A stretch of 64,000 nt of DNA, taken from positions 248,001-312,000 of the IMG/VR virus record IMGVR_UViG_3300042558_004148. One strand, given 5' to 3'. How positions within the stretch are numbered: the first letter of the stretch is position 1; every line of letters begins with the position of its first letter. The position numbers and the translations under genes were made by a program. Positions 46,264-58,149 of the stretch are shown one piece after another. The notes beneath the pieces were generated by a model. That model did no database searches and was not told the origin of the DNA. It saw only the letters and a program-made list of their open reading frames with translations.

Positions 46264-46716
46264 TTTGTTTGTTTGGTTATAAGAAATGGGCCTCGTGATG
46301 AGGTCCATTTCTGTTTGTAGCGGTTGCTAAGAATTCCTACCTGGCAGGGAGGAAACACCGTGGGTTAAAAATTATTTGATATTATTTTTTTATCTGGAAC
46401 CGATTACTTATATTTGCTCTGTAACTAAAACAAATAGCATTATGGAGATTAAAAAATTATTCTGTGTGGCTTTCACCGGTCAGGAAGATTGGGACAGTCC
46501 AACAATCTTACACGTTAGAACAACTGATAGAGATTCAGCATTAAAGATAGCTTTAAATAAAATTGGATTCACTGAAGAGGCAGCTGACTCAATGGCGGAA
46601 GAAGGACTCAATGACTATTTGGTAATTGAAGTTGACGATATAATTGAAGAATAATTTTTTTATCTGGAAATAATATATTACTTTTACTTCATAATCAAAC
46701 TAAAAACAAAAAAGAT

Positions 46717-47133
46717 ATGGCAACACGTTCAAGAATTGGAATCGAAAAAGAAGATGGTACAATACTTTCAGTATACTGTCACTGGGATGGTTACCCATCA
46801 CACAATGGAAAAATATTATTAGAGAACTACACTGACCGAGAGAAAGTTTTAGCTCTAATTGAATTGGGAGCAATCTCAATTCTGGCTAAGAACTTAACAC
46901 CGATTGATGGTGATGCTCACGATTTTGAGAAACCCGCTAAGGATGTGGTTGTGGCTTACCACAGAGACCGAGGTGAAGGACTTCAAATCCCAAGAGTTAA
47001 TGCTTCATTGGAAGCTTTCTCAAGATCTGACTTTGAACAATATGGTTACATATTCACAAAAGACAATCAATGGAAAATAACATTTGGAAGTTCCAGAATT
47101 GCAGACCTAACTCCGGAAATGTGTAAGGAGTAA
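46717..47133 (+). CDS. conserved phage early protein
   Basis: MATRSRIG...SVYCHWDGYP. Confidence 0.7.
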   Translation: MATRSRIGIEKEDGTILSVYCHWDGYPSHNGKILLENYTDREKVLALIELGAISILAKNLTPIDGDAHDFEKPAKDVVVAYHRDRGEGLQIPRVNASLEAFSRSDFEQYGYIFTKDNQWKITFGSSRIADLTPEMCKE

Positions 47134-47953
47134 TAAAGAATTTGTTTGGTTGGTTGGAAGAAGGGTTCGGATTTTGTCCGGCCCTTTTTCTTTTTTGTTT
47201 AATGTATTTGCAAATTGGTTAAACAAATGGTAAACACCCCGGAACATAGTATGGTAGTAACATACCATGCACGCACGCACATTTCCGCGGAAATATTTTT
47301 TTATCCTGAATCTTTTTATTATATTTGCTAATCAAAACCAAAGCCATGAACGAACTAGTAGAAAGAACAAAAGAACATTTTGATAACAACTATCCTCACA
47401 TTCACCTAAGACAATTGGATGATAGAGAGATTGCATCCATATTATCAACCTCTCATATGCAATTCAATATGGACGGATCACCGTTACCATTTGATAAAAA
47501 AATGTATCTGTTGTATGATTACCTTTTATCCCAATCCCTAGTAGATGTCGACGAATAATAATAACGACGGTGTTATCCGTAGACGATCAGTGTTCAGTAA
47601 GAAAGATTATTATTTCATCTTTGGACAGATGCATAAGACTGTCGACGGTGTTTCCATGAAAGACAGATGGGTTAGAGTAAGAGCAAGAAATGAACGTGAT
47701 GCAAAGATAGTATTCGAGAATGAATTCACATCTAAGTACATGCCCTCGGTGAATTCCTATAGCCGATCAGTACCCAAGAAAATAATGTATGGCAGAAAAA
47801 TTTCTAATTCATGGCTCGACCCGCTAGAAGACCCGCTATCAGTTTTTCCTGATGGAGAGTATATGTTTTTTGATCAAAAATATATTCCGTAATATTTTTT
47901 TATCTGAACCGGATTACTTATATTTGCTATGTAACCAATTAAAACAAACAAAC

Positions 47954-48202
47954 ATGCCAGTATTAAAAAACATTTCACACGAAACATTAAGAAACAGATT
48001 AAGAGAAGGAGCAGTTACCTTTTCATTTAGAAAAACTGATGGTTCGCTCAGAAGAGCATTAGGAACTTTGGATTCTTCAAGAATTCCAGAATCAGGAAAA
48101 CCAAAAGGAGGAACACCACCTCCAGGAGTAACAACATTCTTCGATTTGGAAAAATCAGCTTGGCGTTCGGTTTCATATAGACAGGAAATCTGGGTTGATT
48201 AA
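47954..48202 (+). CDS. WYL_2/SH3 beta-barrel-fold protein
   Basis: VTFSFRKTDGSLRRALGTL...FFDLEKSAWRS. Confidence 0.7.
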   Translation: MPVLKNISHETLRNRLREGAVTFSFRKTDGSLRRALGTLDSSRIPESGKPKGGTPPPGVTTFFDLEKSAWRSVSYRQEIWVD

Positions 48203-48409
48203 CCCACCACTTTCATAGTTTAGATTTAGGCGAAAAAGGTCTGGAAATTCCAGACCTTTTTTGTGTGTGGTGTTTTCTGGTGTAGCAGTAGGGAAACACC
48301 GTCGCCAACGGTGGATGTCCAGATGTGAGTAGCGAAAATTAATTCGGATACTATTTTTTTATTACCCAGAAATTTCTTATATTTGCTATGTAACTAAAAC
48401 ATTATACCT

Positions 48410-55752: not shown

Positions 55753-55755
55753 CTA

Positions 55756-55882
55756 AAGCCACCTCAGAGAGGAGCAAGGTTAATGTACTGAGCGTCTTCC
55801 TAGTATGATTAACCCGCAATGGTGGTCCGCAAGACCTTTAACCCCAAGAGTAAAAGGACGTGAGGGGTTGGGTGGCTTTTTA
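55756..55882 (+). ncRNA. ~125 nt structured RNA candidate
   Basis: AAGCCACC/GGTGGCTT closing stem, GGTTAAT/ATTAACC, GGTC-CGCAA-GACC. Confidence 0.45.
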
Positions 55883-55958
55883 AAAATAATTATCAGATTA
55901 TTTTTTTATCCGAGTAGTTAGTCATATATTTGCAATGTAATAATCAAACAAACATAGT

Positions 55959-57980
55959 ATGGGACAAATACCAACAGCAGCAGAGTTTGCATGGAACCAA
56001 GAAGATGATTTTAAAGAAACATTAGCTGAAGCAAATTATCAGAATGTTTATGCAATGATGATTGAATTTGCTAAACTCCATGTGGAAGCTGCATTGAAAG
56101 CAGCAGCATCAGATGCTCACACAAAGGACGTTCCTTACACAGATGATGTAGAGGTTGACAAGGAATCAATCCTTACCGCTTACCCATTAGAAAATATTAA
56201 TTAACCAATCACCAATCATGGAATCAGGAATCAAAGAAATATTAGATAGACTATCAACGGACGAGTTACAAAAACTTTCATTAGTTTTAAGTGGCATGGA
56301 AATTCAAAGCAAAAGAATGTATAGTGAGGAAGAGGTTGAGTTGATTGCTAACGAAATGGTAAATTGGGCTATCGATAACATAGGTAATCCATTTCCGCAA
56401 AGTGGCAAAAAGTTTGATGAGGTGATTGCAAAATACAAAAAGCAATAAGTATGAAAACAGCATTACAAGATTTAAGAGAGGACCTTCAACTATCTATTGA
56501 CTCCTCAAACGAGGCTCTAAATGAAATCGAAGACGTTAAGGTAAGATTAGCCTGTCAGGAGATGGTTAAGCTAACTCTTGAAAACGTTATCAAAAGAATC
56601 GATGAGGAACTTTTGGAAACTGAAAAGAACCAACTTGTCGAGGCTTATGACCAAGCTGAGGGTAAGGTGATAGGCGGAGGTGAACAATACTACAACAGGA
56701 CATATTTAGGTAAATAAGAATGGGAAAATTCACAAAATCAGAAAACTTCATCTTTGGGGTACTGGTAGGCTTAGCCTTTTCGGCAACGGTGATTACATTG
56801 GTAAACATTTTTAAAAACTAACACATGGAAGTATTCTGGGCATTGGGCGGATTAGCATTAGTCATCTTAGCAATGGGATTGCTATTCAACGGTTTTCCTG
56901 ACATCAACATACATAGGCATTATGGAGGAGAAAAGAGTAAGAAGAGTAAAGAAGGAAGAAAAGATAAGTAGTCTTCTTTGGTGGGGTTACCGACACGTCA
57001 ACGGTATTTACCATGTGAAGAGATTCTTCGATGACAAAGACATCAAGGAAGCTAATGAGAGTGATTTCTGTTATGCTGTTGTTGGACCATTCGAAGCTCG
57101 AGACCGAAATGAAGCTCTGGTAATAACCGAGGGCAGAATCAAAAAAAGATTGGGCATTGTATAATGAATGAGATAGTTATCAAGAACGGAGACATTTGGG
57201 ATATAGGGCAAACCGTCAACGGTGTTTCCCGCTTCGTCTTCATTGACAATATCTGGTACTACTATGGGAAATGGACATCACATGAACTTCGGGATCATCT
57301 CAATGAATACCAATATGGACATGGTGCTTTAACCGAGGCCATCATGGATGATGCAAGACTGGGATTTGATGAATGTAAATGTATGGGTAACTTTCTTGAT
57401 TTAGTTGTTGTGAAATAATAATTATTTAAAAATTTCCGGCCCAAATATTTTTTTATCTAGTTAGGTTGTCTTATATTAGCTAAGTAATCAAACAAACAAA
57501 ATCATTATGAAAAGCATTAAAAGAACATCAATCGTATTACTAGTAGCCATAGTAATATTCTTATTACCTTTATCACCTCTATTCTTTATAGAGCCAGTAC
57601 ATGTAGGTAAGGATCCAAACATCTATTCAGCATTTGGTGATGGCTATCAAAAGTTTCTTCTTGCCTTCGCAGGTCTTATATGGGCAACCATAGTACAAGG
57701 ATTAACTAAGGCTTTCCTAAAAGGCGTGATAGTAGAGGAAGAAGAAGACGATAACGATCTAAGTGATTTATTAAAACCATAAACCATGAACAGAGAACGC
57801 TCAGTTAATAAATACCCTGATGGATACATTCCTAAGATCAAGTATTGGATCTCTAAGATGGATGAAGAGGTTGCTAAGGAAACCCCCTCGATACACCAAC
57901 TGGAATCAATCCAAGAAAAGCTAAGGTACTTCATTGGAAGACAAAAGGAAATAGATCCTGAGTATCAACCCATACAATAG
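55959..57980 (+). other. about nine small early genes (55959, 56218, 56451, 56922, 57164, 57507, 57786 and short ORFs)
   Basis: promoters at 55900 and 57448. Confidence 0.6.
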
Positions 57981-58149
57981 AACAAAAGAGACTTCGGTCT
58001 CTTTTTTTGTGGACCAAGAATTCCTAAAGCTACTCTACTAAACACCGTTGGCAACGGTGGTGGGATTATGTCAGCATTAAAATAAGCATGTTGGGTTAAG
58101 ATGCCAACGGTGATCCTGGTATGCTTAATCCCAAATGGAGAAACATGCA

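What the first reader, a model, noticed from the sequence alone, without database searches (positions are those of the whole stretch)
46320..58060. Terminator-palindrome-promoter cassettes: 17 bp CACCGY-N5-ACGGTG repeated in intergenic spaces
Seen: eight full and three half copies, nearly always ~25-50 bp after a terminator ending TTTTTTGTG(G/T) and before the next promoter; flanks are duplicated in pairs (48235-48310 vs 48617-48695; 52530-52585 vs 53295-53350; 54765-54815 vs 58002-58050). They are GC-rich in an AT-rich genome and confined to a 12 kb stretch. Inference: sites for a dimeric protein, such as recombination/shuffling sites, decoy sites titrating a host defence protein, or injection/partition signals.
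Basis: partly seen in the sequence, partly recalled or inferred. Interest (0 to 1): 0.6.

Follow-up and report, generated by a model that had tools for sequence, protein, structure and literature searches.

The report
Terminator-linked palindrome in phage gene cassettes
A 17-base mirror-symmetric DNA site follows almost every transcription terminator in the early-gene region of a giant lake phage; it is conserved in related phages, probably binds a paired protein, and marks where small gene cassettes are gained, lost and shuffled.

Summary
The window has 7 exact copies, 1 near copy and 3 left-half copies of CACCGYYGNCRRCGGTG. All lie 34-46 nt after an intrinsic terminator, and none occurs elsewhere in the 126-kb contig or its complete 373-kb relative.

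The window is the early region of a huge lake-water phage whose host is probably Bacteroidota. It is a one-strand array of tiny genes of unknown function, each with a TAnnTTTG-type promoter.

Complete relatives (290-434 kb) carry 5-9 copies at the same post-terminator position. Two further lineages carry a different symmetric version with the same inner core: GGAACCGYTGNCAACGGTTCC and GGAACGYTGNCAACGTTCC. This points to a co-evolving dimeric DNA-binding protein.

Natural variants show one exact palindrome-to-palindrome 460-bp indel, a 2-kb insertion between two identical copies, and promoter-to-promoter indels. No integrase, resolvase, transposase, ParB or HTH_3 gene was found.

Best reading: a PeSL-like terminator/promoter shuffling cassette with an added, lineage-specific, terminator-linked operator. 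The binding protein and its role (boundary or roadblock is my preferred guess) remain inferred. Decoy, partition and injection readings have no support.

The parts
46282..46323 (+). intrinsic terminator (weak T-run) preceding the first half-site
   Evidence: RNAfold hairpin, dG -21; sequence
46356..46364 (.). left half-site CACCGTGGG, 29 nt before an early promoter
46385..46416 (+). early promoter TTTTTTTATC-N-TTATATTTG
48236..48262 (+). intrinsic terminator
48297..48313 (.). palindrome copy 1 (CACCGTCGCCAACGGTG)
48354..48385 (+). early promoter after copy 1
48618..48645 (+). duplicate of the 48236 terminator, with a degraded T-run
48679..48695 (.). near-copy with one mismatch; a perfect palindrome in the strain of run X17
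49659..49690 (+). intrinsic terminator
49732..49748 (.). palindrome copy 2
49811..49842 (+). early promoter after copy 2
50530..50556 (+). intrinsic terminator
50603..50619 (.). palindrome copy 3; left edge of the 460-bp accessory cassette
50610..51069 (+). accessory cassette (ORF 50667-50984 plus terminator), absent from a ~95%-identical natural strain; the junction lies inside the palindrome
   Evidence: joint 50609->51070, contiguous in the contig
51003..51027 (+). intrinsic terminator
51063..51079 (.). palindrome copy 4; right edge of the accessory cassette
51169..51200 (+). early promoter; left crossover of the promoter-to-promoter indel 51212-51470
52489..52517 (+). intrinsic terminator
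52563..52579 (.). palindrome copy 5
52687..52718 (+). early promoter; left crossover of the promoter-to-promoter indel 52741-53017
53260..53282 (+). intrinsic terminator
53328..53344 (.). palindrome copy 6
54126..54154 (+). intrinsic terminator, followed by a spacer lengthened by a 20-nt tandem repeat
54225..54235 (.). left half-site CACCGTTGGCC
54264..54295 (+). early promoter
54743..54772 (+). intrinsic terminator
54807..54817 (.). left half-site CACCGTCGACC
54835..54866 (+). early promoter
57984..58008 (+). intrinsic terminator
58043..58059 (.). palindrome copy 7 (perfect 8+1+8); last of the array, abutting a repeat-rich non-coding stretch

Best explanation
The 17-bp element is a double-stranded DNA site for a symmetric (dimeric) sequence-specific protein. 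The protein is most probably phage-encoded and co-evolves with its site.

Together with the intrinsic terminator 26-46 nt upstream, the site forms the 3' boundary module of small early-gene cassettes. These cassettes sit in the hyperplastic early region of a ~373-kb, apparently lytic phage of freshwater Bacteroidota.

Shown here:
- The site is real.
- It is confined to the early array.
- It is coupled to terminators rather than to promoters.
- It is conserved at that position in eight lineages, and both arms change in concert in two of them.
- It is a crossover point of cassette gain and loss in natural populations, as are the conserved promoters.

Inferred:
- A protein bound just beyond each terminator acts as a boundary. 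It could stop polymerases that read through, shield the next promoter, or bridge neighbouring sites.
- Cassette exchange uses the phage's general short-homology recombination at these conserved motifs, as in the PeSL cassettes of T4-type phages. It does not use a dedicated recombinase.
For: Reality and clustering:
- 0 copies in 100 shuffles.
- 7, 9, 7, 7 and 5 copies in five complete relatives, each set clustered within 10-40 kb, with 0 hits for the reversed-pattern control.
- The inner core occurs only at the 7 sites in 373 kb.

Symmetry:
- Invariant G8/C10, with Y7/R11 mirrored, a free centre and flanks of low information.

Coupling to terminators:
- 43 of 48 core sites have a T-run within 75 nt upstream, but only 25 of 48 have a promoter within 160 nt downstream.
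- Nine promoter-only junctions at 44.2-47.9 kb have no palindrome.
- Array terminators that seemed to lack the site carry 1-3-mismatch copies at the same offset.

Co-evolution:
- G006 has 17 clustered copies of TGTCAACGTTCC-type sites and no CACCG-type site.
- G008 has GGAACCG...CGGTTCC sites.
- Both sit at the same post-terminator position, while the early promoter consensus is unchanged.

Recombination:
- Exact joint 50609->51070 and promoter-to-promoter joints in one contig.
- G002 has a 2-kb insertion between two identical copies where G005 has one copy.
- Homologous ORFs occur in a different order in different genomes.

No dedicated enzyme:
- Phage_integrase, Resolvase, Y1_Tnp and rve are all absent, while the searches scored positive in control genomes.
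Against: - No binding protein was identified.
- The one candidate with a matching phyletic pattern folds as an SH3-like beta barrel.
- The boundary or roadblock role is pure inference. The terminators already look strong.
- The site starts too far beyond the T-run (26-46 nt) to touch a polymerase terminating there.
- A half-site sits at a fixed 4-5 nt from a promoter box in 12 of 33 cases in two relatives. This hints at a role in initiation instead.
- Microhomology at the 460-bp joint is only about 9 nt, which is short for ordinary homologous recombination.
- The Pfam searches may miss very divergent recombinases or HTH proteins.
Confidence: 0.5

Rival explanations
1. Classical operator or upstream activating site. 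A transcription factor bound at the palindrome represses or activates the next early or middle promoter. The link to terminators is only a by-product of compact intergenic spaces.
For: - About half of the sites have a recognisable promoter within 160 nt.
- The half-site CACCGYG lies 4-5 nt upstream of the AACTTTAACG promoter box in 12 of 33 boxes. Those 12 are 12 of only 20 such heptamers in 74.7 kb.
- A second palindrome family (ATAGTATG..CATACY) sits 30-40 nt upstream of some promoters, so operators are used in this region.
Against: - The distance to the promoter varies widely, whereas the distance to the terminator is narrow.
- 23 of 48 sites have no promoter downstream.
- Promoter-only junctions never carry the site.
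- The site never overlaps the -33/-7 elements.
Confidence: 0.25
2. Dedicated site-specific recombination site. This would be an integron-like cassette system in which an unrecognised phage or host recombinase exchanges cassettes at the palindrome.
For: - An exact palindrome-to-palindrome 460-bp indel with about 9 nt of flanking microhomology.
- A 2-kb insertion flanked by two identical copies.
- Duplicated flanks that end at the site.
Against: - No tyrosine or serine recombinase, HUH or DDE enzyme in five complete genomes.
- From established knowledge of recombinase core sites (not tested here): a 17-bp site with a single free central base is unlike sites that have a 6-8 bp or 2-bp crossover region.
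- In the G002/G005 case, similarity spans the spacer plus the palindrome, about 50 bp.
- Promoter repeats give equally clean indels in the same contig.
Confidence: 0.12
3. The element acts as a hairpin in RNA or single-stranded DNA. It could be a second terminator hairpin, a processing or antitermination signal, or an N4-type hairpin promoter.
For: - The element can form a 5-7 bp GC-rich stem.
- Arm changes between lineages preserve complementarity.
Against: - It lies after strong terminators and before promoters, so it is rarely transcribed.
- C/A and T/G combinations at positions 7/11 occur in both orientations, so no strand has consistent wobble pairing.
- The would-be loop shows mirrored conservation.
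- Degenerate copies show single-arm changes and no compensatory ones.
- Several G006 copies have an extra C in one arm that would bulge.
- Lone half-sites, which cannot form a hairpin, hold a fixed register next to a promoter box.
- Rfam finds nothing.
Confidence: 0.08
4. Replication- or segregation-related sites. These could be initiator titration or handcuffing sites, fork barriers or centromere-like sites linked to a nearby origin.
For: The last copy abuts a 650-bp non-coding stretch. That stretch holds about 8 tandem 14-nt iterons, GC-rich inverted repeats and three extra CGGTG half-sites.
Against: - No ParB.
- The iteron stretch was not seen in the relatives' arrays.
- GC skew gives no origin signal.
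- One-to-one coupling with terminators is not expected for such sites.
Confidence: 0.07

Closest known systems
PeSL (promoter-early stem-loop) cassettes of T4-type phages (Arbiol et al. 2010, PMC2839356; Comeau et al. 2014, PMC4122927)
   Same: - Repeated composite terminator-plus-early-promoter motifs.
- Concentrated in a hyperplastic region of small genes of unknown function.
- Indels between close relatives have junctions inside the repeated motif and leave one chimeric copy.
- No dedicated recombinase.
   Different: - Unrelated sequence and host. The promoter here is the Bacteroidota TAnnTTTG type, not sigma-70 type.
- The terminator is a separate canonical hairpin plus T-run upstream of the promoter.
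- There is a third, GC-rich, dyad-symmetric, lineage-specific element tied to the terminator. PeSLs have no counterpart to it.
- Mini-circles were not tested.
17-bp dyad repeats of Cluster O mycobacteriophages (Cresawn et al. 2015, PMC4351075)
   Same: - A 17-bp inverted repeat with a variable centre.
- Dozens of copies.
- Predicted site of a dimeric protein of unknown identity.
- Apparently lytic phage without integrase or ParAB.
   Different: - The Cluster O repeats are spread through the genome, and a third lie in coding regions.
- They are not linked to terminators.
- The authors report that they are not involved in rearrangements.
Stoperators of Cluster A mycobacteriophages (cited in PMC4351075 and PMC6550527)
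   Same: - Many copies of one protein-binding site in intergenic spaces of one transcription direction.
- Proposed to stop elongating polymerase. This is the model for the boundary or roadblock idea.
   Different: - Stoperators are asymmetric 13-bp sites oriented with transcription.
- They are bound by the known immunity repressor of a temperate phage.
- They are not placed after terminators.
Integron gene cassettes and attC sites
   Same: - One-strand array of small cassettes, each ending in a palindromic site.
- Cassette indels are bounded by the sites.
   Different: - No integrase.
- A 17-bp perfect dyad instead of a 57-141-bp imperfect attC.
- Every cassette has its own promoter and terminator.

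Membership tests
PeSL-type shuffling cassettes | Located in a hyperplastic region dense in small genes of unknown function | tested here: met
   About 45 small + strand ORFs lie in 44-58 kb. Of 30 array ORFs scanned, only one had a Pfam hit (WYL_2), and PHROGs hits were all 'unknown function'. Gene order is shuffled among relatives.
PeSL-type shuffling cassettes | Composite of a host-type early promoter consensus and a stem-loop terminator in one intergenic space, repeated many times | tested here: met
   There are 31 promoter matches on the + strand and 0 on the - strand of the 373-kb relative, with 22 in 280-310 kb. Hairpin plus T-run terminators were found.
PeSL-type shuffling cassettes | Indels between close relatives with the junction inside the repeated motif | tested here: met
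   Joints 50609->51070 (palindrome), 51211->51471 and 52740->53018 (promoters). G002 versus G005.
PeSL-type shuffling cassettes | Sigma-70-like -35/-10 promoter of T4-type coliphages (sequence homology to PeSLs) | tested here: not met
   A sigma-70 consensus scan finds fewer sites than shuffles (41 versus 57). The promoter is T7ATC-N16-TAnnTTTG. This makes it an analogue, not a homologue.
PeSL-type shuffling cassettes | Excised mini-circles | not testable with these tools
   Needs inverse PCR or long reads of infected cells or virions.
Integron / attC | Tyrosine-recombinase integrase encoded with the array | tested here: not met
   PF00589 is absent from five complete genomes and positive in 14 of 14 control genomes.
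Integron / attC | Long imperfect inverted repeat with R/L boxes; promoterless cassettes | tested here: not met
   The site is a 17-bp dyad with sharp edges. Every cassette has its own promoter.
Stoperator-type roadblock sites | Asymmetric site oriented with transcription, bound by a known phage repressor | tested here: not met
   The site is symmetric, and the Y7/R11 variants occur in both orientations. No repressor-like HTH_3 gene was found.
Operators of dimeric regulators | Dyad symmetry, about 17 bp, free central base, both arms changing together between lineages | tested here: met
Operators of dimeric regulators | Identified cognate DNA-binding protein | tested here: inconclusive
   Array genes gave no HMM hits to DNA-binding families. 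The candidate 95-aa protein is not a DNA-binding fold.
parS / centromere | ParB encoded in the genome | tested here: not met
   PF02195 is absent from five complete genomes.

The most novel reading that the evidence does not exclude
The palindrome-binding protein bridges neighbouring sites. Each promoter-to-terminator unit then becomes a closed loop: an insulated, self-recycling transcription unit. The same synapsis lines up palindromes for exchange. This would be a protein-guided, integrase-free cassette system that lets giant lytic phages swap early (host-takeover or anti-defence) genes, with specificity that diverges between lineages and so limits exchange to close kin.
Probability: 0.12. 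Interest if true: 0.8.

Novelty: new variant of a known kind. Interest (0 to 1): 0.55.

Why it matters
Giant phages carry hundreds of small early genes of unknown function, and these turn over quickly. This array shows the cut-and-paste grammar of that turnover in phages far from the T4 group: a terminator, a lineage-specific protein site, and a promoter.

The site gives three practical handles:
- It is a 17-bp bait for fishing out an unknown regulator.
- It marks cassette boundaries in metagenomic phage genomes.
- It offers a natural experiment in protein-DNA co-evolution, with three operator variants at the same position.

If the bound protein insulates or bridges transcription units, that would be a new way for a phage to organise early transcription.

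Tried and rejected
- **Near-identical phage records.** Megablast of 46.0-58.5 kb against GenBank phages found no match.
- **Host regulon.** The scan of 185,579 bacterial and archaeal genomes for CACCGTYGNCRACGGTG gave only single hits per record, mostly in high-GC taxa. This is about what I estimated from base composition. No Bacteroidota regulon appeared.
- **Six-frame family searches of complete relatives.** Phage_integrase, Resolvase, Y1_Tnp, rve, ParB_N and HTH_3 all gave nothing.
- **Pfam and PHROGs on about 50 ORFs of the region.** No DNA-binding or recombination family was found.
- **Candidate binder by phyletic pattern.**
  - The 95-aa protein at 49351-49638 is present in exactly the five CACCG-type lineages and sits next to a palindrome in four of them.
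  - Three control genes also have patchy distributions.
  - Its AlphaFold model (pLDDT 71.6) is an SH3-like beta barrel without a significant PDB match.
  - It is not supported as the binder.
- **The conserved 364-aa gene upstream of the array.** It is DUF932-like and uninformative.
- **A gene consistently downstream of a palindrome (autoregulation).** None was found.
- **Rfam.** Only two tRNAs were found.
- **GC skew.** It is monotonic and gives no origin call.
- **RNA evidence.** No true RNA run holds the phage. The 'RNA-Seq' runs behave as DNA and are kept as contigs, so transcript ends could not be seen.
- **Covariation of the promoter-proximal half-site in the variant lineages.** There were too few AACTTTAAC boxes to test it.
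- **One more relative, L214.** It is a fragment and shows no palindrome.
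Full report
**1. The observation**

The pattern CACCGY-N5-RCGGTG matches seven places in the window: 48297, 49732, 50603, 51063, 52563, 53328 and 58043. None appeared in 100 dinucleotide-preserving shuffles.

- Allowing mismatches adds 48679-48695.
- Three left halves lie at 46356, 54225 and 54807.
- The motif occurs nowhere else in the 125,864-bp viral contig that holds the window.
- Every copy starts 34-46 nt after the T-run of a hairpin terminator with the tail T6-7GTG.
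- That tail occurs 10 times on the + strand of the contig, and 9 of those are in 48258-58004.
Their similarity begins at the terminator and stops inside or just after the palindrome.

**2. What the site looks like**

I aligned 31 copies from the window and its relatives.

- The central base is free.
- Information content drops to background one or two bases outside the 17-mer.
- The consensus is CACCGYYGNCRRCGGTG, an 8+1+8 dyad.
- All four combinations occur at positions 7/11 (C/A 14, T/G 9, C/G 5, T/A 3). No strand therefore shows consistent wobble pairing.
- The 11-nt inner core CGYYGNCRRCG occurs in the whole 373-kb relative only at the seven sites.

**3. Where it sits**

- The window is G000:C1:30863-94862.
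- It is near-identical to part of a complete 373,485-bp IMG/VR genome with terminal repeats.
- The phage occurs in lake-water metagenomes from many studies.
- The host is probably Bacteroidota, for three reasons:
  - The promoters end in TAnnTTTG. By my own knowledge of the literature, this is the Bacteroidota -7 element.
  - Genes lack Shine-Dalgarno sequences, as can be seen.
  - One phage protein carries a type-IX-secretion sorting domain.
- The promoter consensus TTTTTTTATC-N16-TTAYWTTTR occurs 31 times on the + strand and never on the - strand of the complete genome. Of these, 22 lie in a 30-kb zone.
- In the window, these promoters run from 31.3 to 55.9 kb, almost one per gene.
- The genes are tiny and on one strand, and nearly all lack known domains.
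- The T7GTG terminators occupy 47.2-58.0 kb, and each is followed by a palindrome, a near-copy or a left half.
- Junctions that have a promoter but no terminator (44.2-47.9 kb) never carry the site. The palindrome therefore belongs with the terminator, not the promoter.

**4. Relatives**

A pattern scan of IMG/VR and two protein-guided scans found eight lineages of 290-434-kb phages.

- Five complete genomes carry 7, 9, 7, 7 and 5 exact copies. Each set is clustered, and the reversed-pattern control gave none.
- In every copy the terminator stem sequence differs, while the palindrome is kept 26-46 nt beyond the T-run.
- Terminators in these arrays that seemed to lack the site carry copies with 1-3 mismatches at the same offset. 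The arms CACCG/CGGTG are mostly intact.
- Two lineages have no CACCG-type site at all, but they have a different dyad at the same place:
  - G008 has GGAACCGYTGNCAACGGTTCC.
  - G006 has GGAACGYTGNCAACGTTCC, with 17 clustered copies in 348 kb.
- In both, the inner core is the same and both outer arms changed together.
- The early promoter consensus is unchanged in those lineages.

This is the signature of a protein-DNA pair that drifts in specificity. It argues for a binder encoded by the phage, or at least one specific to the host lineage.

**5. Recombination**

I laid metagenome contigs on 48101-54100. One contig, about 95% identical to the window, showed several differences.

- It skips exactly from 50609 to 51070. 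That runs from base 7 of one palindrome to base 8 of the next.
- The skip removes ORF 50667-50984 and its terminator and leaves one valid palindrome.
- The same contig skips 51211->51471 and 52740->53018. Each runs from one promoter copy to the next in register and removes one small ORF.
- Contigs of another study join the spacer of terminator 50550, and that of terminator 52511, to the palindrome at 51063.
- A contig of a different lineage becomes similar to the window from 48293, the left edge of the palindrome.

Between two complete genomes, G002 has a 2.0-kb block of five ORFs flanked by two identical palindromes. G005 has one palindrome there, with the left flank of the first and the right flank of the second.

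Homologous ORFs occur in a different order in different genomes. So the palindrome and the promoter are both crossover points.

**6. What it is not**

- Six-frame searches of five complete genomes found no tyrosine or serine recombinase, HUH or DDE transposase, ParB, or HTH_3. The control genomes scored positive.
- The 17-bp dyad with a single free central base is unlike recombinase core sites.
- It lies after strong terminators and before promoters, so an RNA role is unlikely.
- Degenerate copies show one-arm changes and no compensatory ones.
- Several G006 copies carry an extra base in one arm.
- Rfam finds nothing there.
- The bacterial and archaeal genome scan gave only single hits per record, mostly in high-GC taxa.

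**7. Mechanism**

I take the site to be an operator-like target of a dimeric protein. With the terminator, it forms the 3' boundary of each cassette.

I prefer a boundary role: stopping polymerases that read through, shielding the next promoter, or bridging neighbouring sites. The reason is that the coupling to terminators is close to one-to-one, while only half of the sites have a promoter nearby. This step is inference.

A classical promoter-operator role is the main rival. It gains from the half-site CACCGYG sitting 4-5 nt upstream of the AACTTTAACG promoter box in 12 of 33 cases.

Cassette exchange most likely uses general short-homology recombination at the conserved motifs. This is what has been proposed for PeSLs (PMC2839356, PMC4122927).

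**8. Comparison and novelty**

The array works like the PeSL cassettes of T4-type phages and meets their functional criteria. The sequences, the promoter type and the host are unrelated. The GC-rich, terminator-linked, lineage-specific dyad has no counterpart in PeSLs.

Cluster O mycobacteriophage 17-bp repeats (PMC4351075) are a similar unexplained dyad. However, they are not tied to terminators or to rearrangements. Stoperators are asymmetric and oriented.

I rate this a new variant of a known kind.

**9. What failed**

The binder was not found. A 95-aa protein occurs only in the CACCG-type lineages. However, it folds as an SH3-like barrel, and control genes are patchy too. No usable RNA data exist for this phage.

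Noticed in passing
window 58060-58720: A ~650-bp stretch without a convincing ORF lies right after the last palindrome and is packed with repeats: an inverted partial copy of the palindrome (58102-58112); a 22-nt direct repeat holding CGGTG (58152, 58208); GC-rich inverted repeats (58317-58403); three copies of GCCTCGTATA; and about 8 tandem 14-nt iterons ATAAGTCATAATGK (58585-58693). It looks like an origin of replication or another cis-acting hub. TRF did not find it in the relatives' arrays.
   Followed up: partly
window 44135-44155, 47246-47266, 51118-51138; also L045 and L048: A second, AT-rich palindrome family (ATAGTATG..TAACATACY) is followed by a GC-rich box and lies 30-40 nt upstream of early promoters. 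It is unchanged in the lineages whose main palindrome changed. It is probably the operator of another regulator.
   Followed up: partly
window 48744-48753; about 27 copies in L045/L048: A second promoter class has the box AACTTTAACG, then ATCGT 15 nt after the AAC (a spacing like ECF-sigma promoters), then the TAnnTTTG element 33-34 nt after the box. It is common in two relatives and rare here. The phage encodes its own sigma factor.
   Followed up: partly
window 63094-63990 (- strand): RNA polymerase sigma factor gene (PHROG 351, E 2e-43), on the opposite strand just beyond the early array.
   Followed up: no
window 55477-55550 and 55655-55752: Two tRNA genes lie inside the cassette array. 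ARAGORN calls only the first (Ile, anticodon AAT). The second is 98 nt long in the Rfam match, so it may hold an insert.
   Followed up: no
L051:6015-7916 (G000 118015-119916, outside the window): A phage protein has a cohesin domain and a type-IX-secretion C-terminal sorting domain. This is a marker of Bacteroidota hosts.
   Followed up: no
window 47852-48202: This was the only ORF inside the array with a Pfam hit among the 30 array ORFs scanned: WYL_2 (Sm-like SH3 barrel). It has several partial paralogues in the array and homologues in six lineages.
   Followed up: partly
window 46717-47133: A 138-aa protein (PHROG 1987) with the invariant motif YCHWDGYP is the only small array gene present in all seven lineages compared. 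Its position relative to the conserved ATPase and DUF932 genes differs between lineages.
   Followed up: partly
window 54162-54220; L046 15229-15273: The spacer between terminator and palindrome often holds short tandem or direct repeats that differ from cassette to cassette. Examples are a 20-nt unit repeated twice here and a 10-nt unit repeated 4.5 times in G004. These repeats lengthen the spacer.
   Followed up: no
L194 16758-17230 (G006): A gene on the opposite strand is flanked by ~40-nt direct repeats that include the lineage's palindrome in reversed orientation. It looks like a cassette inserted backwards.
   Followed up: no
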